A DNA stretch of 64,000 nucleotides, from positions 248,001 to 312,000 of IMG/VR virus record IMGVR_UViG_3300050821_002957. One strand, written 5' to 3'. Position 1 is the first letter of the stretch; every line of letters begins with the position of its first letter. Positions 3,505 through 63,872 of the stretch are shown here, piece by piece. Below the pieces are notes generated by a model, which was not told the DNA's origin, did no database searches, and saw nothing but the letters and a program-made list of their open reading frames with translations. Both the position numbers and the translations under genes were made by a program.

Positions 3505-3580
3505 TGGTAGACCCGGTAGGATTCGCACCTACGACCTCATCGATGTCAACGATGCGCTCTAACTACTGAGCTACGGGTCT
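3505..3580 (-). tRNA. tRNA-Val(GAC), atypical elbow (A18, G55)
   Basis: AGACCCG/CGGGTCT acceptor, CATCG-TTGACAT-CGATG anticodon arm, T-loop TGCGAAT, encoded CCA. Confidence 0.92.
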
Positions 3581-10026: not shown

Positions 10027-10985
10027 AATCTAATCCTAACAGGTTCGAGGGCGAATGTCAATAGACGTATCTACTTTTTATCACCAATCAGTTCGTCAAT
10101 AATGGCTTCTAGACCGACATGAATAATGGTGAATCCGTCCGCATCATTCATGGTTTTGGGGTAGCTGACATTAAGATCATGGCGGGAATGTTTGAAAATG
10201 TACGTCAACAGTGAGCCGTCCCGTTTGGCGTCCAAATACAGCACTAATCCCATCTCTCCGAAGTGCTTTAAAAACAAGCGCTTGAGATCCTCAGGAAACG
10301 CCAGATCATCGGCCAGCTTTAACTGCTCCAACGTGTAGGCTTTCATACTTCCAATCCTATCAGGTTCAAGGGTTAAAAGTCAACTAGATGTATCAGTTTT
10401 TTCGTACCAATTTGGCGGCATCGGGGTCCAGCTTTTCGTGTCCCGAATGTCGCAAGGCACGTCGGCGTCTTGTGGCCGTAGATGCTTGTGGTATGCGTGT
10501 AGGCGACGTTGAAATTTGGAAGTGCTCAGATAGTCCCCAAGCGTCATCGGTGCGTCTACGTGCGCCGGATTGAGTTCACCGCAGGTTGTACAACGACGCA
10601 GCAGAAAATCGTGATCGCATTCGGTAGTGGCAGACGATGCATTCACAGTAGTGATGTCGTACCGTGTGAATGTTTCATTCGAGTCCCAACAAAGCGTGAG
10701 CGGTTCGATTTCCCTTATTGTTGCGGTGACAAAACGTGTTCCCTTCTCCTTGGACTCGACAAAAATTTTGAAGGATTCTTGCGTCATTAACAGACGTTCA
10801 ATCACATCACGATAGGTCAAATCTTCATCATCTAAAATACGAATTTTCCACTCACCTTCGCCCGGAAGTTCCCATGCGCCAGCAAGACATTCTTTCAATC
10901 CAGGATGAAGCAGTCGTACCCGAAGATTTGGTCGTTCGATTGGATTGAATTTACCGAAGTTAACGATGCTGAATGCCATGACGCT

Positions 10986-33662: not shown

Positions 33663-34913
33663 CTAGAGACGCCCGGAACGGATCAGTTCGAGGGCCTGTT
33701 CTTTCGATTTGATGTGACCGGCAAGCTGCCCATTCTCGGCGGCGTCCAGGATTCGTTTGAAATCTGGTCCTGGCTTCATTCCAAGTGCCTTCAGATCATC
33801 CCCATTGACAAATTTTGCCGGATTCAAGTCTTCGGCCTTCATGTTGGCAAACATTTTTGACAACATCTGGAAAGCAGCGATATGGACGTGCTTGTCCTGA
33901 GCCTCTGTACGGCATCCATAGAGCTTCAAGGCGTCGGGGAACAGCTTCTCACGCATCAGGCGTTTCAACACGTCCAGCGTCGTTCCAGCCGTCACAGAAC
34001 CGATTCTGGACTGAAGGTCGATGATGCCGGTAATCTGCTTGATCGTGTCGTTAAAAAACTTCAGACGTTTACCAATTTTTTCTGCGCTCCCTGAAGGCAA
34101 CATGTACAACGCACCAGCCAAACCCAATGCTGGATTGATGTTGGTGCCGATGAACGAAAGTGTTGCCATCATCTGAGCGTAATCATACGGAGTCATGTGG
34201 GCAACTTCCGGCAGAACATGCTCTAAGATGCCGGTGTTGTTCATTCCCTTGATTGTCTTGTGAGCGTCATGACCCATTGCCTTGGTCAATTCCTCTGTTA
34301 TGCGCTCTACGTCCATTTTCGCAATGTTCGGAGCGTGCGCCTGCATTGCCGCCAGTGTCTCTGGGTGGATCTCAAATCCGAGCTTCGCCTGAAAACGATG
34401 TGCCCGAAGCATCCGAAGATGATCCTGTGTAAAACGGTCGTTCGGATTGCCGACACATTTGATGAGGCCGTTTTTTGCATCGGCCTTGCCACCATGAAAA
34501 TCGATGATGTCACCAGTGAACGGGTCCATGTACATTGCATTGACGGTGAAGTCACGCCGGTTGGAATCTTGTTGTTGATCACGAGTGTATTCGACATCAT
34601 CTGGACGCCGACCATCAGTGTACTTTCCATCTTTGCGGAATGTGGCAATGTCGATACCGTGGCAGACAACGACACCAAATGATTTTCCTACGACACTTGT
34701 TCCTGGGAAAAGTTTGAGAACTTCTTCAGGTGTGGCGTCAGTTGCTACGTCAAAATCTTTTGGCTTGTGGCCGGTCAAAAAATCACGAACACAACCGCCA
34801 GCGAGATAGCCGACAAAGCCGTGTCTGCGAAGCGTAGTGATTACGTCTTTGGCGTCGTCAAGCGTGCCATAGGTGGACTCCCGAAGGAGGGCGAATTGTG
34901 TAAATGAGAGCAC
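33663..34913 (-). CDS. cca: CCA tRNA nucleotidyltransferase (class II, no HD domain) with capsid-targeting-like N-terminus
   Basis: GGCVRD..DFDVAT, RKD plus flexible loop Y.DGRRP, RRDFTVNA, QDHLRMLR; N-term MLSFTQFALLRE; TAAATA promoter. Confidence 0.88.
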   Translation of the reverse strand: MLSFTQFALLRESTYGTLDDAKDVITTLRRHGFVGYLAGGCVRDFLTGHKPKDFDVATDATPEEVLKLFPGTSVVGKSFGVVVCHGIDIATFRKDGKYTDGRRPDDVEYTRDQQQDSNRRDFTVNAMYMDPFTGDIIDFHGGKADAKNGLIKCVGNPNDRFTQDHLRMLRAHRFQAKLGFEIHPETLAAMQAHAPNIAKMDVERITEELTKAMGHDAHKTIKGMNNTGILEHVLPEVAHMTPYDYAQMMATLSFIGTNINPALGLAGALYMLPSGSAEKIGKRLKFFNDTIKQITGIIDLQSRIGSVTAGTTLDVLKRLMREKLFPDALKLYGCRTEAQDKHVHIAAFQMLSKMFANMKAEDLNPAKFVNGDDLKALGMKPGPDFKRILDAAENGQLAGHIKSKEQALELIRSGRL

Positions 34914-37294: not shown

Positions 37295-37382
37295 TGGTGG
37301 GACGGGTGTGAGTCGAACACACAGGGTTCCAAGGAACATCCGCTTTACAGGCGGCTCTCGCTCCCTACGAGACTACCATCCC
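37295..37382 (-). tRNA. tRNA-Tyr(GTA), long variable arm, extended D stem
   Basis: GGGATGG/CCGTCCC acceptor, loop CTGTAAA, TTCGACT T-loop, ACCA end. Confidence 0.9.
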
Positions 37383-42865: not shown

Positions 42866-42953
42866 TGGCTGGAGGAGCAGGACTCGAACCTGCATATGAG
42901 CTTTCGCTACGACACATTAACAGTGTGCTGCCTTACCGTTAGGCGACCCTCCA
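42866..42953 (-). tRNA. tRNA with GTT (Asn) anticodon on a class II long-variable-arm body
   Basis: TGGAGGG/TCCTCCA acceptor, G73-CCA, loop CTGTTAA, 18-nt variable region with AGC-GAAA-GCT hairpin. Confidence 0.88.
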
Positions 42954-42967
42954 ATATAAATGGATGT

Positions 42968-43408
42968 ATGGCAAATTCACAGAAAGTAAAAGAATGGCGC
43001 AAAAGAACCAAACAACGAATGATTGATGCAATGGGTGGATCGTGTGTAGTCTGTGGCTACACTCGTTGTTCAGCCTCATTAGGATTTCATCATCTCGATC
43101 CGAGCAAGAAACATTTTGGTTTCGGAGGTCTTCGTGCCAACCCAAAATCTTGGGAGAAGATCAGCGAAGAACTACGAAAATGCGTTCTGATTTGCAATCG
43201 TTGTCACGGAGAAGTACATGATGGTATAACCATCATTCCCATTAATGCAAAACGGTACGACGAAAGTTATGCTCAGAAATTTGGAAGAAGAAAAATGGCT
43301 CCGGGGACAGGACTCGAACCTGTAACATCCGCTTTAACAGAGCGGCGCTCTACCATTGAGCTACCCCGGAATGAGGTTGCTTCTTTGGTTAGGGTCACGC
43401 CGTTTTAA
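42968..43408 (+). mobile_element. HNH endonuclease between two tRNA-Asn genes
   Basis: CVVCGY..C..SLGFHHLDP..K...E..KCVLICNRCHGEVH. Confidence 0.85.
43296..43370 (-). tRNA. tRNA-Asn(GTT), canonical
   Basis: TCCGGGG/CCCCGGA, CCGCT-CTGTTAA-AGCGG, GCCA end. Confidence 0.95.
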
Positions 43409-43711: not shown

Positions 43712-44647
43712 TTACACCACCAAATCTTTGGGCAAGCGTTCAGTCCGTGCAATCTCTTCTGCGGTCGGTTTGATCACATTGCCGACGATTCCACCGAAGA
43801 TTGCTCCGACCGTATCTGTGTCGCCACCGACCTCAATGAAGCTGTTGATGCAGGATGCGAACGAAAGACCTTTTTCCAAAGCCTGATGTGCCTGCCATAA
43901 TGCAAAAGGAACTGTATCGACTGCCGTTACTTCTTTGCCGTTTCCAACCTTGCCAATTATTCCCCAATTGGTTTCGTTAAATGCACCCTCACTGGCGACC
44001 CATTCGATGCGATCACGAAGTTCCCCTGATGGTGTGTATTTGATGATGTTTAACCAGAAGTCTTCCTCAGGTCTTCCATAAGTTACGTTTGCTGCGGCTA
44101 TGGCGACCGCTATCGAACCGGCAATAGCATCGACGTGATAATGGGTCACTTCGGCAGATAGACGTGCTTCTTGCGCTACAAGGCCATAGTCAGGTCCAAA
44201 GTGTGCGCCAATGACAGCATCACGCATTGCCGATCCGTTGCCTTTTGAGCCGATGCCCGGTCCCCACCAATTCTTGCTATGCTCAAGCCAATTGTCGGAG
44301 TCATAGCTATAGGTCGTCAACAAACCACGAGTGCCACGCCCATAACCACGCTGAGGATCAACATGAAAATTACGAGCTAATTCCTGAGCGAGTTCGAGTT
44401 GATTGATCGTATTGAATCGGTACAAAGTTCTAACGACACCAATACCGACATGTGTGTCGTCTGTCCAGGGATAGAGAATGTCAATTTTTGTGATCCCTCG
44501 TTCAGTGGCGACATTCCCAGCCTTGTAATATTCAGCCGGAAGAATCTTCATCTGATTTTCGCCTGCTGCATCGCCTACCGACAAGGCAAGAAGCGAAAGA
44601 TAAGTTTCTTTCTTTTTGTACTGCATCGGAGCAAGACAGGGTGTCAT
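43712..44647 (-). CDS. ADP-ribosylglycohydrolase family protein
   Basis: VGDAAG, WTDDT, RGYG, GNGSAMR, VTH, GGDTDT. Confidence 0.92.
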   Translation of the reverse strand: MTPCLAPMQYKKKETYLSLLALSVGDAAGENQMKILPAEYYKAGNVATERGITKIDILYPWTDDTHVGIGVVRTLYRFNTINQLELAQELARNFHVDPQRGYGRGTRGLLTTYSYDSDNWLEHSKNWWGPGIGSKGNGSAMRDAVIGAHFGPDYGLVAQEARLSAEVTHYHVDAIAGSIAVAIAAANVTYGRPEEDFWLNIIKYTPSGELRDRIEWVASEGAFNETNWGIIGKVGNGKEVTAVDTVPFALWQAHQALEKGLSFASCINSFIEVGGDTDTVGAIFGGIVGNVIKPTAEEIARTERLPKDLVV

Positions 44648-45292
44648 ATTTCACCTACTTGGTCGGTTTGTGCCAACCATATGCATGTTGAGCGGTCTTT
44701 GGCTCATATCCTAGAACGAGGTTACAGTTGGCAATACATTCGTCAAGATGACCGTCGCCTTTGTGAGTTGGATCTTGCAAAAATTGAAGTGCATGACGAA
44801 TTGCTTGGCGTGCAGATCGAGCTTCGTTTTGCAGACGTTGAATTTGTTCTTCTATAGTTTCTACCATGTCTTAGTGTTTGTCCTCCACCACCCAAACAGA
44901 TAGCATACCACGGCGTAGATAATTGTCCATTCACCAGCAGTGAGAAAGAATGTGCCGCATCCTATCGTAGGAGTATCGAATGACAAGTTTGCAAAGAAGG
45001 CTTTTCCAAGACAAACAGCGAGACCGCCAAAATAAACAGCGGCAAAGAAGAGTTCACTTGGTCGAGGTACGGTGATATTGGGCCACTTCATATCCACAAT
45101 GTTCGCACCGATCACCAGGGAAGTCAAGTTTTGCGCCTTGATGTAGATGAGCTTCTTGATTTGGATTGTCGGGCGTGCAGATAGTTTCAATGCCGGTAAA
45201 CTTTGTGTTTGGATCGAAACTGAAATTTGGATCTAATTTGTAAATCATAGCAAGAAGTATATAGCACTTCTAAGCCAATGAAATTAAGGTTT

Positions 45293-45366
45293 TGGCAGGA
45301 GTGGTAGGAGTTGAACCCACGCTAAAGGTTTTGGAGGCCCTTGTGCTACCGTTACACCACACTCCT
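45293..45366 (-). tRNA. tRNA-Trp(CCA)
   Basis: AGGAGTG/CACTCCT acceptor, loop CTCCAAA, GCCA end. Confidence 0.92.
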
Positions 45367-45382
45367 GTGATGAGGAAGATTA

Positions 45383-45458
45383 TGGCCGCTGGTTCCAGTT
45401 ACGCTCTGGACTCTTCTGTTCTTCAGACAGACGCTTTCACTAGATTAGCTTACCAGCG
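45383..45458 (-). tRNA. tRNA-Phe(GAA), atypical T-loop AGCGTAA and D-loop AG
   Basis: CGCTGGT/ACCAGCG acceptor, TCTGT-CTGAAGA-ACAGA anticodon arm, TCCAG/CTGGA T stem, GCCA end. Confidence 0.85.
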
Positions 45459-45476
45459 GTGTTGTGCTTTGAGAGA

Positions 45477-45515
45477 GGCGCAACGACTGCTGGTTTCAAC
45501 AGCAGTCGTTGCGCC
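45477..45515 (-). other. Perfect 16-bp hairpin with 7-nt UUGAAAC loop, 5' of tRNA-Phe
   Basis: GGCGCAACGACTGCTG inverted repeat. Confidence 0.8.
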
Positions 45516-45605
45516 CCGGTGGTAAATCGCCAATATGTAAAAGTGCGTGTCATCGTAATTCTATTTATACCACGATCATTGCTGTCTGTCAACAATGAAA
45601 TTCTG

Positions 45606-45684
45606 TGTCGTGAACAAATGGTTCCTCGGATGGGAGCGGTATCATAGGCAGTGATAATCCCACCTGATTCCCCGGCTCACGACA
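45606..45684 (-). ncRNA. Y-RNA-like RNA 1 (bulged-C terminal helix)
   Basis: UGUCGUGAGC-C-GGG...GGGAUUAUC...AUUUGUUCACGACA. Confidence 0.7.
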
Positions 45685-45990
45685 AAATAACAAGGCCACT
45701 CGGAAGTAGCCAAGATCCCTTGGTACACATGGTAACAGGGTCTACTATTCGTGAATGATTTCGCCTATCACTCGTTCTGGCATTAGCTTCTCAGGCGGGA
45801 CACTTCCATTCATAAGGTCAACCATGCGCTGTGCTTGAGCTAGAGTGTGAAAGGTTCCATACGGTGTGACATGTGCTCCACCGTCGCCAGAACCTACTTC
45901 AACCAAATCATACTTCGTTTCCGTCTTCGGCCAAATCTCGTACCTAATTTTCTGTTCGGTCGATGACTTGTTGACGAATTCCATAAATGT

Positions 45991-46521
45991 GTGTCGGTGT
46001 TAAGGCACACCGAGCAGGCCGCAAGATTTTGTTACTGATCAATACCTGCTAAGAACCAGGATGTTTAAGAACTTATCCTTGAGAAAGCTCCGTTGTAGGC
46101 GACACGGCTTCCCTGAGAGTCAGAGTTACTTCAGCTACTCCTGATGGTATGGTGACTCAGCTACCCCGACTTTTTAGTGATCGGCTCCATTCCGGTATTC
46201 GATTCGGCAACGACAGATTCCGACTCTGCAACGTTCTGCTTCTTTTCGATGAGAAGCAAAAATCATAAAAACTCAAAATGACCAGAGGACCCTCAGCAGT
46301 GAGCGCAGATCCCACGTTCGCATACAAGCGTCAATGACAAGTTTTATCCAACGAGCCATTGTCTTGTACGTTGGCTCACCGTCGAGTGCGCTATCCAGTT
46401 CGACACACTCACCTGCGGTTCTAATGACTTTCGTCTCCCGCTGGCCCTATCATCGCCTCACACTTCCGTGTGTTTCAACATCCTGGTCATCTCAAGGGCG
46501 ACAGCCTTGCGGCCACGACAC
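45991..46521 (-). ncRNA. Large pseudoknotted ncRNA, ROOL-like (~530 nt)
   Basis: Long-range pairs 45991-96:46516-21, 46017-25:46506-14, 46055-65:46477-87 and 46077-84:46490-97 (last two cross); lies in a tRNA cluster; family name is an inference. Confidence 0.65.
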
Positions 46522-46768
46522 CCCACCAGCTTTTTTACTGTGTACTGATCACAGGGAGAGCTAGAACGACTTTCGCCGCCCCACACCTACCGCCACTGGT
46601 CGAGACTTCTACATGCGACCAGCCATGTCGCTAAAAGGGGCACTACGAGTAGATGCCCTCCACCACGTTGTTCTTTTACGTCCAACAACGAAACGACTTA
46701 GACCCATAACTCTGACCGGAAATCAGAACTATGATCCACACTCCCCGGTGGAAGCCGGGAAGACTTTG

Positions 46769-46855
46769 AATGTGAACTAATAATTGACAAGGGATTATAG
46801 CCCCGAAGGACCATTTCACCATTTGAAAGATAACCCTCATCTTCCGGCTCACATC
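46769..46855 (-). ncRNA. Y-RNA-like RNA 2
   Basis: GAUGUGAGC-C-GGAAGAUGAGGGUUAUCUUUC...AUUAGUUCACAUU. Confidence 0.68.
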
Positions 46856-46864
46856 ACGAAATAC

Positions 46865-46963
46865 GGCTGCTTGTCCTACCATTAGACGACCGGATCTGCC
46901 GACGCTTTACGCCATGAGAGCAGATTGGACTCCGACCGGGACTCGAACCCGGATTTCTCAGCT
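46865..46963 (-). ncRNA. Circularly permuted tRNA-like module (YrlA-type T-acceptor-D order) 1
   Basis: CCGGG-UUCGAGU-CCCGG, then UCGGAGUCCA, linker hairpin, UCCGG-UC-GUCUAAUGGUAGGAC; closed by GCUG/CAGC. Confidence 0.8.
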
Positions 46964-46971
46964 AGACGAAT

Positions 46972-46996
46972 GACGGAGCATAGTGCGCTCTACGTC
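46972..46996 (-). repeat. Conserved bulged hairpin, copy 1 of 3 (others 58131..58157, 58628..58654)
   Basis: (GA)ACG-UM-GAGCG-CASUR-UGCUC-CGU. Confidence 0.8.
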
Positions 46997-47001
46997 GGAA
47001 T

Positions 47002-47078
47002 TGGTGGATACACATGGGAATTGAACCCATAACCTTCTCGGTGCAAGCGAGTTGCTCTCCCAATTGAGCTAGTGACCC
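47002..47078 (-). tRNA. tRNA-Ala(TGC) with a 1-nt bulge in the acceptor stem
   Basis: GGGTCAC / GTG-T-ATCC, G3.U70, loop CTTGCAC, ACCA. Confidence 0.9.
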
Positions 47079-47085
47079 ATAACTT

Positions 47086-47162
47086 TGTACCTCGAACAAA
47101 TAAGTATCAGAGGGCTTGTCATTAGGAAAGATAACCCTCTAAATCCGGCTCGAAGCACTACA
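47086..47162 (-). ncRNA. Y-RNA-like RNA 3
   Basis: GCUUCGAGC-C-GGAUUUAGAGGGUUAUCUUUC...AUUUGUUCGAGGU. Confidence 0.72.
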
Positions 47163-47169
47163 AAACTTT

Positions 47170-47248
47170 TGGTGGATCGCCAGGGATTTGAACCCTGCTG
47201 TTATCCTCGGTGCAAGCGAGGCAAACACCCCAAGCATTTCCGCAACCC
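47170..47248 (-). tRNA. tRNA-Ala(TGC), non-canonical 6-bp D stem
   Basis: GGGTTGC/GCGATCC with G3.U70; AAATGC-TTGGG-GTGTTT D arm; CCTCG-CTTGCAC-CGAGG. Confidence 0.85.
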
Positions 47249-47256
47249 ACATTTAA

Positions 47257-47466
47257 ATAGCACGAACAAATAGCGGTAGAAGACTGATAGGAGACTGCAT
47301 TTAACGCACCCTCGGATTGGATACCGATCAGATACGCTTCAAACTCCCCTCCTCAAAGTTACGGGCGTCTTTTACTACACGTACAACGAACTGCTTTGTG
47401 CCCACCAAATACTGCCGGTGAACTTTGTCATGGTTAGGTAACCTTCCAACCAGCGGCTCGTGCTAT
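47257..47466 (-). ncRNA. Y-RNA-like RNA 4 (long internal domain)
   Basis: AUAGCACGAGC-C-GC...GAAGGUUACC...AUUUGUUCGUGCUAU. Confidence 0.7.
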
Positions 47467-47468
47467 GT

Positions 47469-47530
47469 CGAAACAGAACGAAACAGAACGAAACAGAACG
47501 AAACAGTGCTCAACGATGCGAAACAGTGCG
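47469..47530. repeat. 10-bp tandem repeat CGAAACAGAA x3 plus two CGAAACAGTG variants
   Basis: Read directly from sequence. Confidence 0.9.
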
Positions 47531-48220
47531 TTAGGTCAAAGATCGTATTCTTTATCTATACACGCTACAGTTTGCTTTCAATAGCGCCTTTGACTCTTTC
47601 AGTCTAACATCCTTAGTATGGGATGTCAAGTGCCACGAACATAATAATTTCATCTTCGTCTTTTTTGCGACGAGCAGCAGCTTCTTTCTCAGTCAACACC
47701 AGAGGAGACGGATTGCCTTCGACTTTGATATTCACTGATAAACCTTGCTGGAGCCATCCAGATACTTCATCGGGCGGCGTCTCGACAAATGCCTGATCAC
47801 ACGCCTTCTGAATTTCGACATTGCGTATTGCAGCAAGCGGTTTGCCGGATGGCGTCATGATGTCTACGTTACAAAGAAGCATGTTTATCTACCAACTGCT
47901 ACGGCTGAAATTCCGATAACACTTTCAATATTGTACAACAGACGAGCGGCTTCTGACAATTCTGAGCCGGTGCGATCCAGTGTAGCATGGACGCCGGTCG
48001 GATCAGAATCAGCTTTTGAGTCATCGTCTTCTCCGGTGTATTGAAGAACATCTAACACCGTTTTTAAGCGACGAGCCAACATCCTAGCCAATTGCAAATT
48101 TGCATCCGAAGAAGATTGAATTGTCGTTGGTTCGTGGTTCTTTTCTGCTGGACCGTCAACAACTAATCCAAACTTCTCTAATAAAACTTTGTTTCCTTTC
48201 TTTCCTGTATTCATAATTTT

Positions 48221-48296
48221 TGGTTGGCCCAGATGGAATCGAACCATCAACCTCAGAATTATCAGTTCTGCGCTCTACCAATTGAGCTATGGGCCA
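48221..48296 (-). tRNA. tRNA-Ile(GAT)
   Basis: TGGCCCA/TGGGCCA, CAGAA-CTGATAA-TTCTG, ACCA. Confidence 0.95.
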
Positions 48297-48381
48297 ACAT
48301 ACTCAGAAGTAGTTATACTAGCGGCGAATCATTAGTGGAGGCCCAATAATCCGCCGCCAGTTTTACAGAATCAACCAAAAA

Positions 48382-50175
48382 CTACTCTTCGGTCTCTTCT
48401 GCGATCCCAGCACTTGAACCACGAATAAAATCCGTAACCAATGCTGGAACATTCGAGTCGAACCCAACGATGTCCAAAGAATACGGGTCCTTCGGATCTG
48501 CGATGGTAAATTGCGTAGAAACCATTCCCATCACGATCAGGCGCACATCATCCTGCCCACGATGCTTACGATACTGCTTGAGAGCCTGCGACGGTTGCAT
48601 TTGTCCAGCCCAAGTCTCATTATCCGTGATCACCATGAAAGCGTCTGCGTCGATGCCAGCCTTTTGAGCGTGAAGCATCGGTGCAGCACAATCGGTTCCA
48701 CCAGCCGACATGCGAGAGGTCTTTGCCAACGCAGTCTTCAGAGTGTCCTTTGCGGTGATGCCAATTTCCTGCATTCCCGTAGAAAATGCATAGATAGCGT
48801 AATTCGGTTCCGTGCGAGCCACAACCATCGCCATTGCTGCGCCTGCTTGTGCTGCCGTGATTCCGGTGCCTTGGATGATGCTGGACGCCCACGACATAGA
48901 ACCAGAAACGTCCATGCCAATGTACGTAGCCTTACCAGTCGGAATTGCGTTTGCGAATGCCAAGTAGAACGTGTTCTCTAAAGCGTCCACAATGGTCGGT
49001 ACAACGGTCCAGGTCGCATCGCTGCGCTGACCGTGGCCTTGGCCGTAGGTGCCTTGTGCCAACAATACCTGGAGCGGGTGAATCTTGCTCTTCTTGACGT
49101 AGGCTTCATCGTTCAAACGAGACACGACGAGCTTCGATGCTGCCGACAGCGGCTTCAAGAGACCAATCTTCGACATGGTTCCAAGATTACGAACCATTGC
49201 AGTTACCGGCATCTTCTGAAGCAGAGCTTCCCAGACTTCCGGTTGCGTCTTAAACTGCGTCGGAATCATTTCGTGAGTCAATCCACCGTCGATGATGCAC
49301 TTTACGATAGTGCTCGTATCCGTCGCCTTCTTTGCGGTTTCATAGGCGGTGATCAACTTCGGTGCGTTCGATCCGGTCAACAAATCATAAGCGTTCTGAT
49401 AGCGAGCACGCTGATTCTGAATTTCCGCAGAAGTCAGATCAGTCGTGCGATGGCTGTTGCCCTGCCACTTCTTGACAGAACGAGTCCAGTTCTGAGCAGC
49501 TTCGTTCAAGGCATCGAGACCACCGAAACGACCCCAAGCCAGCAAAGCACTCTTCATCGGATCAGTCGCCTTGACGTGTGCGAGGCTGACGAGATCACGA
49601 GTGGACCAGCCATCACGCTGTTGATACTTCGCCAACTGATAAGCCAGCGAATCTTCCGTGCGTTCGGTGTACCAGTTGCCGATTGCAGTCTTTACACCAC
49701 GACCGTATCCACGCATGGAATCGAGGTACTCGTTGAAGTGGAACATGTGAGTACCGATACGTGCAACCTTGCTCAATTGCGACAGAGCATAAGCAGCAGT
49801 TTCAGCCGAACCAAAATTCGGTGTTGCGGCAACTGCCAGGGCAAACAATGCCGGATCGTTCTTCGGAGCACGGCCTGCTTGCGAAATGTTGACGATCATA
49901 TCGACCGTGCGCTTTCCATCCAACTGCAAGCACGCACGAACGTTCGCTGCGTTGTCTACAGTCATCTTCTTGGCAGATGCATAGTACGTCGGCGCATCGC
50001 TACCGAGAATCAAAAATCGTTCGAGCATCTGGAAGGGAGTGATGGTGAAGGTGTATCCACCAGCGTTGTTCTGCTTCATCTCTGCTTCCCGGCCCGGAAT
50101 TGCCTGCGACTGTGATGTCTTCTTGCCGCTTAATACCGTTGCGTAATTGCTCTTTGCTGATCCTGCCTTTGCCAT
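48382..50175 (-). CDS. rsr: Ro60/Rsr TROVE-domain RNA-binding protein
   Basis: NNAGGY, RFLILGS, GRAPKNDPALFALA, KYQQRDGWS, RNLG.M, IHP, vWA DVSGSM, TDNETW, GFD; AGGAGA SD before ATG 50175. Confidence 0.95.
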   Translation of the reverse strand: MAKAGSAKSNYATVLSGKKTSQSQAIPGREAEMKQNNAGGYTFTITPFQMLERFLILGSDAPTYYASAKKMTVDNAANVRACLQLDGKRTVDMIVNISQAGRAPKNDPALFALAVAATPNFGSAETAAYALSQLSKVARIGTHMFHFNEYLDSMRGYGRGVKTAIGNWYTERTEDSLAYQLAKYQQRDGWSTRDLVSLAHVKATDPMKSALLAWGRFGGLDALNEAAQNWTRSVKKWQGNSHRTTDLTSAEIQNQRARYQNAYDLLTGSNAPKLITAYETAKKATDTSTIVKCIIDGGLTHEMIPTQFKTQPEVWEALLQKMPVTAMVRNLGTMSKIGLLKPLSAASKLVVSRLNDEAYVKKSKIHPLQVLLAQGTYGQGHGQRSDATWTVVPTIVDALENTFYLAFANAIPTGKATYIGMDVSGSMSWASSIIQGTGITAAQAGAAMAMVVARTEPNYAIYAFSTGMQEIGITAKDTLKTALAKTSRMSAGGTDCAAPMLHAQKAGIDADAFMVITDNETWAGQMQPSQALKQYRKHRGQDDVRLIVMGMVSTQFTIADPKDPYSLDIVGFDSNVPALVTDFIRGSSAGIAEETEE

Positions 50176-50250
50176 ATCATTATCTCCTATGATACCTAAT
50201 TTTTTCGACTTCACCAGAATAACACATGCCTGATTGTTGTCAAGCATGTA

Positions 50251-53451: not shown

Positions 53452-53988
53452 TCATTGCGGCTCGAAGAGAATGACGTGTATGTTATCAAGCTCCTGTAGT
53501 CTATCATAAACCAATGCCTTTACGTCAACAAAATTCAGACCACCATTCGCACAACCTAACGCAGGCATCGCAAGAGACTTGATGAGTAAACCTGACTTCA
53601 GCCGGTCCTTCAAATCATCGAGGCCAGCGGCGATCCATTCTAGTTTTGATCCATTTCTCCAATCGTCTTTCGTCGGAAAATTGATAATGAATTCGTTGAT
53701 CTGAGATGTTTGATAGTGTTCACATCCGCAGGCACACCACAACCCCTGATCATGGGCGTCAAAATCACATTCACAAAGACAGTCAGGGATTTCATGCCAA
53801 ACCCAAACCTTACCAGTCTGAATGTACTTGCGAGCGCACAATTTCCTGTATTCGACGTACATGTCAGGATAACGCTGCTTGAACTGGAGTGCGATACCTT
53901 TGCCCATCACGCCGACACAATTCACAGTGTTGACGATAGCTTGTGCGCCGCAGTCGAAGAGGTTACCAGTCGTTCGTGTTTCGATCAT
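53452..53988 (-). CDS. Macrodomain protein (DarG-like) with Cys-rich insertion
   Basis: GNLF, AIVNTVNCVGVMGKGIALQFK, IINFPTK, PALGC.NGGL. Confidence 0.9.
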   Translation of the reverse strand: MIETRTTGNLFDCGAQAIVNTVNCVGVMGKGIALQFKQRYPDMYVEYRKLCARKYIQTGKVWVWHEIPDCLCECDFDAHDQGLWCACGCEHYQTSQINEFIINFPTKDDWRNGSKLEWIAAGLDDLKDRLKSGLLIKSLAMPALGCANGGLNFVDVKALVYDRLQELDNIHVILFEPQ

Positions 53989-62445: not shown

Positions 62446-62748
62446 TTATTCCTCGTCGTTAATATCTAGCCAATCGGGAGCTTCCCAGGTTCGGTGAATA
62501 ACTCTGACGTAGATTACACCTTCTTCTTCGTCAAGATTCCATTCAAGATCATCGCCAACTTCTATGTTCAATTCACGAACTAATCCATCTGGCAGTGTCA
62601 TCATTCCGTTCGGTTGTATGACACAGGCATATGACCTATTACCAAATCCAGAGTTCACCCAGACACCTAAAATGGGTGGTTCATCATTATCTTCAGTCGG
62701 CTCTTCGTCAAAGTCTTCCGGTTCTAGCTCTGCGTAATCTTCAGCCAT
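62446..62748 (-). CDS. AbrB/MazE-like DNA-binding protein
   Basis: IQPNG.MTLP..LVRELNIEVGDDLEW. Confidence 0.7.
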   Translation of the reverse strand: MAEDYAELEPEDFDEEPTEDNDEPPILGVWVNSGFGNRSYACVIQPNGMMTLPDGLVRELNIEVGDDLEWNLDEEEGVIYVRVIHRTWEAPDWLDINDEE

Positions 62749-63872
62749 TTTCTTCCTACCCGAATCACTGACATTTCTGGCAACGGTTCTTTGAGTCTTG
62801 GATCGATAACTACACTACCATTTACATTTACGGCTCCGCTCTTCACCAGACGACTGCCCTCTGAGACCGAAGATGCCAAACCCATCAGCACCAAGACTCG
62901 ATCCAGGCGTGTATTGACCGAATGAAAAACCGGAATTCTTACAACTGGAATATCGACCGGCGCTTCACGATCTGAAAATCTCTTTGTCCATTCAATTTCA
63001 GCGGTGTCTGCTTTTGGTTCGTCATGTAACCAATGAACAATTCGCCATGCCAAATATTTCTTAGATTGAAATGGTTGAGGATGCCAGCCACATTTATTTG
63101 GAAACAGAACCTCTTGCCATTGGCGCATTACATCATCAGCAATCGACATAACTTTGCTGAACATTTCAAATGGTTCATCCAGCAAACCAATGTGATTACC
63201 GAACGACTTGGACATCTTTCGACCGTCCGTACCAAACAACAAAGGAACCGTCGCAATAACCTGAGGTTTCTCACCACGATCATGCATGTACATCCGGCCC
63301 ATCAGCATGTTGTAAAATTGATCGTTGCCGCCAAGTTCAATATCTACACCTTCTCTGAAAGAGTCATATGCCTGAAGCATGGGGTATAACATCTCATGCA
63401 TAAAGACCGGAGTGTTTGTTACCTTGCGTTCTTTAAAATCGTCACGGCCACCGATTTGACTGAGGGTGAAATGGGACATGAGACGAATTACATCTTGCAT
63501 CTTCATCTCGTCAAACCATTCGGCATTCTTTTTGACGACGGTTTTGGTTCGATCCAAAATTTTGAAAGCCTGTGTCATATAGCTCCAGGCGTTCGTATTG
63601 ATTTCATCGTCAGAAAGCGCAGGCCGAAGCTGATTGCGCCCGGTCGGATCACCAATCGATGCTGTGGTGTTGCCGACGATCATCACAATGGTGTGCCCAG
63701 CATCCTGAAATTCACGCATCTTTTTCAACAGCACAGCATGACCAAGATGTAGGTCTGGTGCTGTGGGATCGAATCCGGCTTTCACACGTAACGGATGACC
63801 TGACGCAATAAGAGCATCAAACTCCTTTTCGTCGAGGAGTTGCGTAAACCCGGATTTGAGTGATTGTTGCAC
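62724..63872 (-). CDS. tyrS: Tyrosyl-tRNA synthetase
   Basis: GFDPTAPDLHLGH, GDPTGR, YP.LQAYD, GG.DQ, KMSKS, C-terminal S4 domain. Confidence 0.97.
   Translation of the reverse strand: MQQSLKSGFTQLLDEKEFDALIASGHPLRVKAGFDPTAPDLHLGHAVLLKKMREFQDAGHTIVMIVGNTTASIGDPTGRNQLRPALSDDEINTNAWSYMTQAFKILDRTKTVVKKNAEWFDEMKMQDVIRLMSHFTLSQIGGRDDFKERKVTNTPVFMHEMLYPMLQAYDSFREGVDIELGGNDQFYNMLMGRMYMHDRGEKPQVIATVPLLFGTDGRKMSKSFGNHIGLLDEPFEMFSKVMSIADDVMRQWQEVLFPNKCGWHPQPFQSKKYLAWRIVHWLHDEPKADTAEIEWTKRFSDREAPVDIPVVRIPVFHSVNTRLDRVLVLMGLASSVSEGSRLVKSGAVNVNGSVVIDPRLKEPLPEMSVIRVGRKWLKITQS

What the first reader, a model, noticed from the sequence alone, without database searches (positions are those of the whole stretch)
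45383..50175. Phage Ro60 locus with a multi-Y-RNA / tRNA / giant-ncRNA cassette
Seen, in transcription order: rsr, hairpin, tRNA-Ile, two small ORFs, repeat leader, Y4, tRNA-Ala, Y3, tRNA-Ala, conserved hairpin, permuted tRNA module, Y2, ~530-nt pseudoknotted RNA, ORF, Y1, then tRNA-Phe and Trp. Known: bacterial Rsr binds Y RNAs via a bulged-C helix, YrlA RNAs mimic tRNA, and Rsr is linked to RNA decay and repair under stress; a few phages carry rsr plus yrlA. Inference: this phage builds an unusually diversified Ro RNP repertoire, with tRNAs as processing punctuation, possibly to counter host tRNA-cleaving defences. I know of no description of four Y-like paralogs plus a ROOL-like RNA beside a phage Ro.
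Basis: partly seen in the sequence, partly recalled or inferred. Interest (0 to 1): 0.92.

Follow-up and report, generated by a model that had tools for sequence, protein, structure and literature searches.

The report
Phage Ro60, Y-RNA array, large RNA
A giant phage encodes the RNA-surveillance protein Ro60, then four Ro-type 'Y' RNAs threaded between tRNA genes and a ~600-base structured RNA of no catalogued family; the Y RNAs are a known kind (arrays are common in nature), while the large RNA looks new.

Summary
The gene at 48382-50175 is a full Ro60/Rsr (TROVE + vWA; E 5e-105 to the Deinococcus Rsr structure). A covariance model of the Y stem finds exactly four matches in the 64-kb window, Y1-Y4. 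It finds none in 892 kb of unrelated viral DNA. It finds 134 and 185 matches in two sets of rsr loci, all on the rsr strand, with strong covariation.

These are YrlA/YrlB-class Y RNAs. Arrays of 3-7 copies beside rsr are common in metagenomes, so four copies is not exceptional. What is distinctive is the layout. The Y RNAs sit downstream of rsr, behind a conserved promoter, 9-12 nt from tRNA-Ala genes. Three paralog types with type-specific conserved loops recur in phages whose Rsr is 64-77% identical.

The ~606-nt RNA (45996-46601) matches no Rfam family, including ROOL and GOLLD. It has full-length homologues in three related phages, compensatory changes, retained GNRA loops and a covarying pseudoknot. 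It is absent or truncated in others.

The permuted tRNA module is specific to this window. Any role against tRNA-cleaving defences is untested.

The parts
50216..50243 (-). Promoter-like site P1 (TTGACA-16-TATTCT) in front of rsr
   Evidence: Consensus scan. It lies inside the mechanical ORF upstream of the SD-preceded ATG at 50175. Function is inferred.
48382..50175 (-). rsr: Ro60/Rsr protein, about 597 aa (TROVE ring + vWA domain)
   Evidence: Pfam TROVE 2.9e-40 and vWA_Ro60 2.2e-57. PDB 2NVO 4.7e-105 and 1YVP 2.9e-92. Homologues are 583-599 aa. Start chosen from the sequence.
48321..48357 (-). Long hairpin just after the rsr stop, with no U tract
   Evidence: Read from the sequence. Not listed by the terminator scan.
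48221..48296 (-). tRNA-Ile (GAU)
   Evidence: ARAGORN. Rfam tRNA 75.5 bits.
47885..48214 (-). Small ORF, 109 aa, unknown function; a called gene of similar size follows rsr in L277 and L278
   Evidence: ORF list. Gene calls of 118 and 106 aa at the same position. No Pfam or PHROG match.
47613..47882 (-). Small ORF, 89 aa, unknown function; its 3' end holds promoter P2
   Evidence: A 79-aa gene is called at the same position in L278.
47601..47629 (-). Promoter-like site P2 (TTGACA-17-TAGACT) for the ncRNA operon, conserved in relatives
   Evidence: The same TTGACA plus 16-17 nt plus TATACT/TATTCT is seen in L083, L080 and L278.
47469..47526 (-). Leader with a 10-nt tandem repeat (CUGUUUCGUU-type), specific to this window
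   Evidence: L278 has none there. L083 has a different 20-nt repeat.
47258..47465 (-). Y4: long Y RNA (Ro-type closing stem, GGUUACC, about 170-nt insert), always just upstream of a tRNA-Ala
   Evidence: Model R1 18.5 bits, E 0.0027, not in the training set. Orthologues with invariant ends in L278-L283 and L083.
47170..47248 (-). tRNA-Ala (UGC) with an enlarged D region and encoded CCA
   Evidence: ARAGORN. Not reported by Rfam at the gathering score.
47088..47157 (-). Y3: short Y RNA between the two tRNA-Ala genes
   Evidence: R1 53 bits. Rfam RF01656, a nematode stem-bulge RNA, 34.6 bits, E 1.4e-4. Fold z -5.0.
47005..47078 (-). tRNA-Ala (UGC), encoded CCA
   Evidence: ARAGORN. Rfam 51.1 bits.
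46972..46996 (-). Conserved hairpin (stem GAGC/GCUC, 7-nt loop, covarying outer stem)
   Evidence: The same hairpin follows the second tRNA-Ala in L277 and L278 and is also present in L083 and L080. Outer stems are ACG/CGU, GCG/CGC and CAUG/CAUG.
46926..47000 (-). Degenerate tRNA-like element (7-bp acceptor, perfect T arm 46935-46952, CCA, poor anticodon stem); window-specific
   Evidence: Found only by ARAGORN at a lowered threshold. Absent from L277, L278, L280, L285 and L287.
46873..46890 (-). D-arm-like segment after a hairpin (the 'permuted' half); window-specific
   Evidence: Read from the sequence. Not conserved.
46768..46856 (-). Y2: Y RNA with a conserved loop (CUUUCAAnUGGUGAA) and an extra tetraloop hairpin
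   Evidence: R1 58.3 bits. Y2-type clade in eight relatives (L277, L278, L280, L083, L282, L285, L286, L287), with hairpin stems covarying.
46602..46767 (-). Insert absent from L278 and the other full-length relatives: three hairpins, a remnant of the tRNA-Ala 5' end, a weak terminator-like stem
   Evidence: No counterpart in L278. A similar stretch follows Y2 in L285, L287 and L277. Repeat D15.
45996..46601 (-). Large structured RNA, about 606 nt: pseudoknot, GNRA hairpins, long-range helices, 3' array of hairpins with UCAC loops
   Evidence: Profile match. Homologues in L278, L083, L282 and L286. Excess of compensatory pairs. No Rfam family.
45745..45984 (-). ORF of 79 aa, unknown function; absent in L278, where the large RNA abuts Y1
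45694..45711 (-). Terminator-like hairpin with a U-rich tail just before Y1
45606..45684 (-). Y1: Y RNA with a conserved loop (CACUGCCUAUGAUACC)
   Evidence: R1 39.7 bits. Y1-type clade in eight relatives.
45564..45592 (-). Promoter-like site P3 (TTGACA-17-TATAAA), conserved in L278
   Evidence: Read from the sequences. Not listed by the scan, because the sixth base of the -10 hexamer is A.
45477..45516 (-). 15-bp leader hairpin before tRNA-Phe; the UUGGCGNUUUACCA motif just upstream of it (about 45521-45533) is conserved
   Evidence: Related leaders in L080 and L278.
45386..45458 (-). tRNA-Phe (GAA)-like gene with an atypical T loop
   Evidence: Rfam tRNA 39.7 bits. ARAGORN calls it only at a lowered threshold.
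45293..45366 (-). tRNA-Trp (CCA)

Best explanation
This is the Ro60 (Rsr) ribonucleoprotein module of a huge phage. rsr is expressed from its own promoter.

Downstream, a second conserved promoter (P2) drives a polycistronic non-coding transcript. Its order is leader, Y4, tRNA-Ala, Y3, tRNA-Ala, hairpin, Y2, large RNA, Y1. A third promoter drives tRNA-Phe and tRNA-Trp.

Host RNase P and the tRNA 3'-end enzymes cut out the tRNAs and so release the flanking Y RNAs. Each Y RNA binds the outer face of the phage Ro60 ring through its closing helix. That helix has the 5' strand GAGC-C-GG, a bulged C, and the 3' strand UUUGUUC. The type-specific loops of Y1, Y2, Y3 and Y4 act as different effector or gating modules. 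By analogy with Deinococcus Rsr-Y-PNPase and Thermus phage phiLo Ro60-Yrl-PNPase, they would tether Ro60 to host exoribonucleases or other partners. The result would be to redirect decay or repair of structured RNAs (tRNA, rRNA) during infection.

The ~606-nt RNA is a separate, co-transcribed, independently folding RNA that occupies a variable slot between Y2 and Y1. Its role is unknown; the main candidates are a scaffold or decoy, or a Ro60 client.

**Shown here:** the identity of the protein, the existence, conservation and covariation of the Y stems, their rsr linkage, the paralog types, the tRNA juxtaposition, and the conserved promoter-like boxes.

**Partly shown:** the structure signals of the large RNA, which come from few sequences and an inflated control.

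**Inferred:** transcription units, processing, Ro binding, partners and biological role.
For: - **Protein:** Ro60 with TROVE and vWA domains, similar to solved Ro60 structures.
- **Y model specificity:** exactly four matches in the window and none in 892 kb of unrelated viral loci. There were 134 matches in 78 IMG/VR rsr loci and 185 in 75 metagenome rsr loci, all on the rsr strand and mostly within about 1.5 kb of rsr.
- **Stem covariation:** 91.9% of cells paired against 71.8% shuffled. Covariation score 0.692 against 0.308, reached by 0 of 500 shuffles. Slid controls gave 0.18 or less.
- **Loop motif:** a GGUUAUC-type motif in 100 of 111 distinct copies.
- **YrlA link:** longer copies in other phages carry T arm, acceptor hairpin and D arm, the YrlA layout (Chen 2014, PMC4201824).
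- **Paralogs:** Y1, Y2 and Y3 types form clades with conserved loops across phages with 64-77% Rsr identity. Y4-type orthologues always sit 4-13 nt before a tRNA-Ala.
- **tRNA abutment elsewhere:** Y and tRNA lie 0-8 nt apart in unrelated loci L002, L008, L026, L056, L065 and L073.
- **Promoters:** P2 and P3 boxes are conserved.
- **Large RNA:** consensus-fold z -12.9 and -7.6. Compensatory pairs 25 against 11.3 +/- 2.8, and 41 against 17.5 +/- 4.1. One long-range helix has three double compensations.
- **Precedent:** a phage Ro60 binds two neighbouring Y-like RNAs and host PNPase (PMC12135203).
Against: - There are no expression, processing or binding data. The phage is uncultured.
- Rfam Y_RNA (RF00019) gave no match at E up to 10. 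The RF01656 match to Y3 is below its gathering score, 34.6 against 38.
- The 5' motif is GCCGGA or GCCGCU, not the published GNCGAA.
- None of Y1-Y4 holds the tRNA-like domain that Chen 2014 found in at least one Y RNA per species.
- Terminator-like hairpins at about 46640 and 45694-45711 lie inside the proposed transcript, so Y1 or the large RNA may be transcribed separately.
- I found no PNPase, RtcB or RNA ligase in the 64-kb window.
- The large RNA is absent from L277, fragmentary in L080 and rearranged in L279. Its central part does not align between the two subgroups.
- The shuffle control does not keep dinucleotide content or local conservation, so its z-scores are inflated.
Confidence: 0.72

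Rival explanations
1. The stretch between Y2 and Y1 is not one functional RNA. It is a fast-turnover spacer built from decayed tRNA and Y fragments plus stable hairpins, kept only by recent common ancestry.
For: - It is absent from L277, fragmentary in L080 and L287, and partly inverted in L279.
- Only two deep subgroups exist, and their centres do not align.
- It holds a 15-of-16 match to the 5' end of a relative's tRNA-Phe and a remnant of the tRNA-Ala 5' end.
- IMG/VR holds no other copy of its most conserved motif.
Against: - In both independent pairs there are about twice as many compensatory pairs as in shuffles, and much lower consensus energy.
- GNRA loops are kept while their stems change from GAC/GUC to GCC/GGC.
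- The pseudoknot pairing covaries in five copies: AUCAG/CUGGU, ACCAGC/GCUGGU, ACCGGC/GUCGGU, CCCGG/CCGGG and GCCGAC/GUCGGU.
- No genes were called in the corresponding stretches of relatives.
Confidence: 0.17
2. The Y-like hairpins are processing or stability elements of phage tRNA operons, such as RNase E or RNase III sites or spacers. They work without Ro60, and their closeness to rsr is mere linkage.
For: They abut tRNAs within a few nucleotides in several loci. No binding data exist.
Against: - Most rsr loci with Y arrays have no tRNA nearby.
- There were no matches in 100 viral loci fetched without regard to rsr.
- The conserved strand with a bulged C resembles the Ro-contacting motifs GGUCCGA and GNCGAA (PMC4201824).
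- Y3 matches the nematode Y-homologue family.
- Phage phiLo Ro60 binds its two neighbouring Y-like RNAs (PMC12135203).
Confidence: 0.06
3. The cassette mainly supplies or protects tRNA. The Y RNAs and the tRNA-like pieces, including the 3' hairpin array of the large RNA, act as decoys that soak up host tRNA-targeting nucleases or modification enzymes. Ro60 only stabilises them.
For: - tRNA-like fragments occur in the cassette.
- The large RNA carries 3-5 repeated hairpins with a conserved UCAC loop and a tRNA-Phe-like 5' segment.
- The window encodes a CCA-adding enzyme, TyrRS and at least nine tRNAs.
- The Salmonella rsr operon responds to damaged tRNAs (PMC7790460, abstract).
Against: - Nothing here tests decoy activity.
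- The tRNA-like module is window-specific.
- Y1-Y4 lack T and D arms.
- The tRNA-Phe similarity is one short match, which I estimate arises by chance about 1 time in 100.
Confidence: 0.05

Closest known systems
Bacterial Rsr with YrlA/YrlB Y RNAs (Salmonella Typhimurium, Mycobacterium smegmatis, mycobacteriophages; Chen et al. 2014, PMC4201824)
   Same: A TROVE + vWA protein with several small RNAs encoded beside it on the same strand. The 5' and 3' ends pair. The 5' strand has a conserved G-N-C-G-purine-A motif. Related phage loci hold the T arm, acceptor hairpin and D arm domain.
   Different: Here the Y RNAs lie downstream of rsr, behind their own promoter and between tRNAs. Both strands of the Ro helix are conserved, with a bulged C. 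The motif is GCCGGA rather than GNCGAA. None of the four holds a tRNA-like domain. There is no rtcBA.
Thermus phage phiLo Ro60 with Yrl1/Yrl2 and host PNPase (PMC12135203)
   Same: A phage-encoded Ro60 with neighbouring Y-like RNAs. It offers a plausible mechanism, a Ro60-Y-PNPase complex that takes over a host nuclease.
   Different: phiLo has two Yrl RNAs upstream of the gene and no reported tRNA interleaving or large RNA. I did not measure similarity to the phiLo protein.
Deinococcus radiodurans Rsr-Yrn1-PNPase (RYPER)
   Same: The closest solved protein (2NVO, E 4.7e-105). Both strands of the Ro-binding helix are retained, as Chen 2014 notes for Deinococcus.
   Different: A cellular, stress-induced system with different loop modules.
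Metazoan Y RNAs and nematode stem-bulge RNAs (Rfam RF00019, RF01656; PMC4450293)
   Same: A lower stem with a bulged C, an upper stem, and UUAUC at the 5' end of the loop. Y3 aligns end to end with RF01656.
   Different: The match is below the gathering score, and RF00019 gave no match. These are bacterial-type genes with no Pol III features or oligo-U tail. Common descent of the UUAUC motif is not shown.
ROOL and GOLLD large ornate RNAs (Weinberg 2017, PMC5737381)
   Same: About 600 nt, many helices and pseudoknot(s), phage-borne, next to tRNAs and probably co-transcribed with them.
   Different: No match to either Rfam model at E up to 10. Known so far only from a handful of related huge-phage contigs. 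Always between two Y RNAs of an rsr cassette. Modular and variably present.

Membership tests
Ro60 / Rsr (TROVE family) | TROVE (HEAT-repeat ring) domain | tested here: met
   PF05731, 2.9e-40, residues 59-398 of the 621-aa ORF.
Ro60 / Rsr (TROVE family) | C-terminal vWA domain of the Ro60 type | tested here: met
   PF25045, 2.2e-57.
Ro60 / Rsr (TROVE family) | Full-length similarity to solved Ro60 proteins | tested here: met
   2NVO 4.7e-105, 9NEN 1.1e-96, 1YVP 2.9e-92.
Ro60 / Rsr (TROVE family) | Binds Y RNA on the outer ring surface | not testable with these tools
   Needs EMSA or co-purification.
Bacterial Y RNA (YrlA/YrlB class) | Encoded next to rsr on the same strand | tested here: met
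   Y1-Y4 lie 0.9-2.8 kb downstream of rsr on the same strand. All 319 model matches in other rsr loci are on the rsr strand.
Bacterial Y RNA (YrlA/YrlB class) | 5' and 3' ends pair into a closing stem | tested here: met
   Covariation score 0.692 against 0.308 shuffled, reached by 0 of 500 shuffles. Nine of ten pairs show double changes.
Bacterial Y RNA (YrlA/YrlB class) | GNCGAA(N0-1)G motif near the 5' end | tested here: inconclusive
   The window has GCCGGA (Y1-Y3) and GCCGCU (Y4). Relatives have GCCGAA, GUCGAA or GUCGGA. It is a variant of the motif at the same place.
Bacterial Y RNA (YrlA subclass) | Internal tRNA-like domain: T arm, acceptor hairpin, D arm | tested here: not met
   There is no T or D arm inside Y1-Y4. 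The only T arm/D arm pair (46873-46952) lies outside any Y stem and is window-specific. Y1-Y4 are therefore YrlB-like or a further variant, not YrlA.
Bacterial Y RNA (YrlA/YrlB class) | Bound by Rsr in vivo | not testable with these tools
   Not applicable with sequence tools.
Metazoan Y RNA / nematode sbRNA (RF00019, RF01656) | Reaches the Rfam gathering score | tested here: not met
   RF01656 scored 34.6 against 38 for Y3 only. RF00019 gave no match at E up to 10.
Metazoan Y RNA / nematode sbRNA (RF00019, RF01656) | Bulged C in the lower stem and UUAUC at the start of the loop | tested here: met
   Invariant bulged C. A GGUUAUC-type motif in Y1-Y3, GGUUACC in Y4, and in 100 of 111 relatives. 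The feature is as described in PMC4450293.
ROOL / GOLLD large RNAs | Match to the family covariance model | tested here: not met
   No match at E up to 10 in 45000-48500 with permissive filters. No match at gathering score in L278, L083 or L282.
ROOL / GOLLD large RNAs | Large multi-helix RNA beside tRNAs in phage DNA | tested here: met
   About 606 nt with conserved helices and a pseudoknot, flanked by Y RNAs and tRNAs. This is a resemblance of context only.
tRNA (the element at 46926-47000) | Cloverleaf that passes standard detectors | tested here: not met
   Missed by ARAGORN default settings and by Rfam. Found only at -ps70, with a mismatched anticodon stem.

The most novel reading that the evidence does not exclude
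The ~600-nt RNA defines a new class of large, modular, pseudoknotted phage RNA that works with the Ro60-Y RNA system. It could be a Ro60-loaded scaffold, or a decoy whose repeated UCAC-loop hairpins and tRNA-like pieces sequester a host RNA-targeting factor. On this reading, huge phages use ordered sets of Y paralogs (Y4, Y3, Y2, Y1), released by tRNA processing, as interchangeable adaptors for it.
Probability: 0.2. Interest if true: 0.85.

Novelty: new variant of a known kind. Interest (0 to 1): 0.6.

Why it matters
What bacterial and phage Ro60 particles do is still largely open. This clade offers a natural experiment: four Y paralog types, each with its own conserved loop, kept in fixed order across phages.

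Those loops are candidate adaptor sites for different partners. They can be tested directly by pull-down from a laboratory host lysate.

The tight, recurrent Y-tRNA junctions give a simple testable rule for how Y RNAs are made without dedicated promoters or terminators.

The UUAUC-type motif at the start of the loop is shared by phage Y RNAs, nematode stem-bulge RNAs and, as I recall, several vertebrate Y RNAs. This suggests a second conserved feature beyond the Ro site.

Large structured RNAs without a known function are rare. One that always sits inside a Ro60 cassette comes with a ready hypothesis about its partner.

Tried and rejected
- **Rfam.** At gathering score and at E up to 10 on the cassette, only tRNAs and one sub-threshold nematode sbRNA match appeared. 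There was no Y_RNA, ROOL, GOLLD, RNase P, tmRNA, intron or riboswitch match. Rfam also failed to flag textbook YrlA-like RNAs in L003, L026, L059 and L002, so its silence on Y RNAs says little.
- **Cultured phages.** blastn against cultured phage records found only tRNA matches and a weak rsr match. There is no close cultured relative.
- **Large RNA against other rsr loci.** nhmmer found nothing outside the window's own clade.
- **Motif scans of IMG/VR.** A 15-mer was too unspecific: it fetched 118 loci and none was homologous. These loci were reused as a negative control. A 26-base gapped motif found only the window's own contig.
- **Four-way alignment of the large RNA.** The two subgroups are too diverged for a common structure, so I analysed the pairs separately.
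- **A Y stem around the T arm/D arm module.** None is present, and the module is absent from relatives. It was rejected as a YrlA domain.
- **Small ORFs.** Pfam and PHROGs gave nothing for the 109-, 89- and 79-aa ORFs.
- **RNA-repair genes.** Scanning 49 further ORFs of the window found no RtcB, RNA ligase or PNPase.
- **Literature.** Two review papers on bacterial Y RNAs were not held. The claim that arrays of four or more are undescribed therefore rests only on the papers I could read.

Full report
**Source and context.** The window is part of IMG/VR contig IMGVR_UViG_3300050821_002957, 405,631 bp. An identical copy exists in a 321-kb metagenome contig (L081). No cultured phage is close; only tRNAs and a weak rsr match were found. 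Phage identity is supported by a gp53 baseplate protein and by many ORFs without known families. The window also encodes a CCA-adding enzyme (33663-34913), TyrRS (62724-63872), a ClpX/ClpB-like ATPase, ClpP, a Macro-domain protein (53455-53988) and an ADP-ribosylglycohydrolase (43712-44647). Gene order around rsr (Macro, ClpP, rsr, gene-free gap, ADP-ribosylglycohydrolase) is conserved in related huge-phage contigs of 370-400 kb.

**The protein.** The ORF 48382-50247 (minus strand) has TROVE (2.9e-40) and Ro60-type vWA (2.2e-57) domains. It matches the solved Deinococcus Rsr (2NVO, 4.7e-105), human-type Ro60 (9NEN) and Xenopus Ro60 (1YVP). Homologues are 583-599 aa and cover 95% of the ORF. 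A TTGACA-16-TATTCT box lies in the first 30 bases of the ORF, and an ATG at 50175 follows a GGAGA.

**The Y RNAs are real and belong to a family.**
- By eye, four hairpins share a closing helix. The 5' strand is GAGC-C-GG, the 3' strand is UUUGUUC, the C is bulged, and the outer pairs covary.
- A simple descriptor found the same design on the rsr strand next to rsr in many of 78 other viral rsr loci.
- An alignment of 14 copies gave eight stem pairs, five with compensatory changes, and an invariant bulged C.
- The covariance model R1 built from it finds four matches in the 64-kb window on both strands. They are Y2 (58 bits), Y3 (53), Y1 (39.7) and Y4 (18.5 bits, E 0.0027, not in the training set).
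- In 78 IMG/VR rsr loci it finds 134 matches at E up to 1. In 75 metagenome rsr loci it finds 185 at E up to 0.01. All are on the rsr strand, and most lie within about 1.5 kb of rsr. In 100 unrelated viral loci (892 kb) it finds none.
- On the 111 distinct IMG/VR copies, 91.9% of cells pair against 71.8% in shuffles. The covariation score is 0.692 against 0.308, reached by 0 of 500 shuffles. Sliding the partner drops the score to 0.18 or less. That alignment was fitted to the model, which favours the structure, but the slid controls and the strand and position bias are independent of the fitting.

**What kind of Y RNA.**
- Longer copies in other phages contain a T arm, an acceptor-like hairpin and a D arm in that order. 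This is the YrlA layout of Chen et al. 2014 (PMC4201824).
- The conserved 5' strand (GCCGAA, GUCGAA, GUCGGA, GCCGGA) is the place and near-sequence of their GNCGAA(N0-1)G motif.
- The window's Y1-Y3 are short (70-89 nt) and have no tRNA-like domain. Y4 (208 nt) has a long insert without T or D arms. They are best described as YrlB-like or variant members.
- A GGUUAUC/GGUUACC motif about seven bases after the 5' strand, at the start of the loop, occurs in 100 of 111 copies.
- Y3 aligns end to end with Rfam RF01656, a nematode stem-bulge RNA (34.6 bits, gathering score 38, E 1.4e-4). That family is regarded as Y RNA homologues and is described as having a bulged C and a conserved UUAUC at the 5' end of the loop (PMC4450293). 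From memory, several human Y RNAs have the same GGGUUAUC at the same spacing; I did not test that here.
- Rfam did not flag even the clear YrlA-like RNAs of other loci, so it appears to have no model for this class.

**Four copies is not unusual.** In the IMG/VR set, 53 of 78 loci have matches. The counts are 1 copy (8 loci), 2 (24), 3 (11), 4 (8), 6 (1) and 7 (1). Several metagenome loci have five or six tandem copies upstream of rsr. The papers I could read describe two per genome: Salmonella, M. smegmatis and Deinococcus in PMC4201824, and phage phiLo in PMC12135203. Large arrays therefore seem under-described rather than rare.

**What is distinctive here.**
- Closer relatives were reached through the protein database. 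These are L277 and L278 at 76-77% Rsr identity, and L279-L283, L285-L287, L080 and L083 at 64-69%.
- They share a scaffold. P2, leader, Y4-type, tRNA-Ala, Y3-type, tRNA-Ala, variable slot A, Y2-type, variable slot B, Y1-type, P3, leader hairpin, tRNA-Phe and tRNA-Trp follow in that order.
- A tree of the short copies separates Y1, Y2 and Y3 types. Each has its own conserved loop: Y1 has CACUGCCUAUGAUACC. Y2 has CUUUCAAnUGGUGAA plus a hairpin whose stem covaries and whose tetraloop changes between UUCG and GNRA.
- Y4-type RNAs have invariant ends and variable interiors, and always end 4-13 nt before a tRNA-Ala.
- In the window the gaps are 9 nt (Y4 to tRNA-Ala), 12 nt (tRNA-Ala to Y3) and 9 nt (Y3 to tRNA-Ala).
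- Y and tRNA abut within 0-8 nt in unrelated loci too: L002, L008, L026, L056, L065 and L073.
- The P2 box (TTGACA-17-TAGACT, 47629-47601) and part of the leader are conserved in L278, L083 and L080. So is P3 (TTGACA-17-TATAAA, 45592-45564) in L278. These are consensus matches kept in relatives, not mapped promoters.
- The 10-nt leader repeat is real but specific to this window.

**The large RNA: occurrence.**
- No minus-strand ORF of 60 aa or more lies in 45990-46770, and no gene is called in the corresponding stretches of relatives. The minus strand is G-rich there.
- The first 166 nt after Y2 have no counterpart in L278. They include a copy of the spacer plus the tRNA-Ala 5' end.
- The conserved unit is 45996-46601.
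- Homologues are L278 11649-12346, L083 3263-3946, L282 8646-9300 and L286 8160-8634. L287 has a weak 3' part. L279 has a partial copy with one piece on the opposite strand. L080 has a 127-nt fragment. L277 has none.
- Nothing was found in about 150 other rsr loci or, for its best motif, in IMG/VR.

**The large RNA: structure signals.**
- RNAalifold on window + L278 gives 125 pairs, 25 of them with compensatory double changes. These include an 11-bp long-range helix (UUGAGAUGACCAG with CUGGUCAUUUUGAG) with three double changes, and hairpins that keep GNRA loops while their stems change.
- Against 100 column shuffles, the consensus energy is -120 against -44 +/- 6, and compensatory pairs number 25 against 11.3 +/- 2.8. 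For L083 + L282, energy is -85 against -40 +/- 6, and pairs number 41 against 17.5 +/- 4.1. This control destroys dinucleotide content and local conservation, so the z-scores are upper bounds.
- A hairpin, an A-rich linker and a downstream strand that pairs with the hairpin loop form an H-type pseudoknot. Its loop pairing covaries in five copies across three phages.
- The 3' part holds 3-5 hairpins with stems CYGA/UCRG and a loop containing UCAC.
- The centres of the two subgroups do not align.
- No Rfam family matched at E up to 10.
- I conclude it is a structured RNA of a new, small and modular family. It resembles ROOL and GOLLD only in size and in lying beside tRNAs in phage DNA, a context noted in PMC5737381.

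**The 'permuted tRNA module'.**
- Right after the second tRNA-Ala lies a tRNA-like element (47000-46926). It has a 7-bp acceptor stem, a perfect T arm and CCA, but a poor anticodon stem. Only ARAGORN at 70% threshold calls it.
- A hairpin and a D-arm-like segment follow. The T-then-D order looks like YrlA, but no Y stem encloses it. L277, L278, L280, L285 and L287 have other sequences in this slot.
- What is conserved there is the small hairpin 46972-46996.

**Mechanism and limits.** The best-supported reading is a phage Ro60 particle system with several adaptor RNAs made from a tRNA-punctuated transcript. It parallels Rsr-Y-PNPase in Deinococcus and Ro60-Yrl-PNPase in phage phiLo (PMC12135203). 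It also fits the view that TROVE proteins of jumbo phages belong to RNA-repair toolkits (PMC7824862). Transcription units, processing, binding, partners and any link to tRNA-cleaving defences are inferred, not shown. Terminator-like hairpins inside the cassette may split it into more units than I propose.

**Verdict.** The Y RNAs are new members of a known class, arranged in a new way. The large RNA is a candidate new family resting on few sequences.

Noticed in passing
window 47088-47157, 46768-46856, 45606-45684; alignment A3: A GGUUAUC/GGUUACC motif at the start of the loop is kept in 100 of 111 phage Y RNAs. It matches the UUAUC motif of nematode stem-bulge RNAs. I found no mention of it in the bacterial Y RNA papers I could read.
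   Followed up: partly
window 53455-53988 (Macro) and 43712-44647 (ADP-ribosylglycohydrolase): Two enzymes that remove ADP-ribose flank the ClpP-rsr-ncRNA block, and this synteny is kept in related huge phages. It may form one island for reversing damage to RNA or protein.
   Followed up: no
window 33663-34913, 62724-63872, and tRNAs at 3505-3580, 37295-37382, 42866-42953, 43296-43370: The window also holds a CCA-adding enzyme, a tyrosyl-tRNA synthetase and four more tRNAs (Val, Tyr, two Asn). One tRNA-Asn (42866-42953) has a 15-nt insertion in the variable region.
   Followed up: no
L278 10729-10902 (tRNA at 10804-10875); L065 6436-6573: Some Y RNAs enclose a complete tRNA-like unit in the normal order, D arm then T arm (Rfam tRNA 38.7 bits). 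This is the opposite order to YrlA.
   Followed up: partly
L080 4290-4570 compared with L083 2410-3670: L080 looks like L083 with several internal deletions at short repeats: the tRNA-Ala, one Y RNA and most of the large RNA are lost. It is either a real deletion variant or an assembly collapse.
   Followed up: partly
L279 9034-9342 (+) and 9570-9728 (-): The 3' part of the large-RNA homologue lies on the opposite strand from the 5' part. This is an inversion or a misassembly.
   Followed up: no
window about 46100-46165; L080 4956-5030: The 3' domain of the large RNA contains a 15-of-16 match to the first 16 bases of a relative's tRNA-Phe, and a second match to its anticodon-stem region. The repeated UCAC-loop hairpins may derive from tRNA pieces.
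   Followed up: partly
L059 12245-13787; L056 8084-8509: In other phage rsr loci the Y array is followed by a tmRNA (a permuted tmRNA in L059) and then by 30 or more tRNAs. Ro60 genes often sit at the edge of phage tRNA islands.
   Followed up: no
L002 12162-12257, L035 12504-12595, L038 13136-13234, L059 14725-14816: Unusually long (92-99 nt) tRNA-Ile(UAU) genes recur close to rsr in four unrelated phage loci.
   Followed up: no
L278 11198-11556; L287 4796-5131; L285 3445-3791; L083 2491-3090: The slot between the second tRNA-Ala and Y2 holds 340-600 nt with no called genes in L278 and L285. The sequence differs between subgroups and is conserved between L285 and L287. It may hold further unrecognised RNAs.
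   Followed up: no
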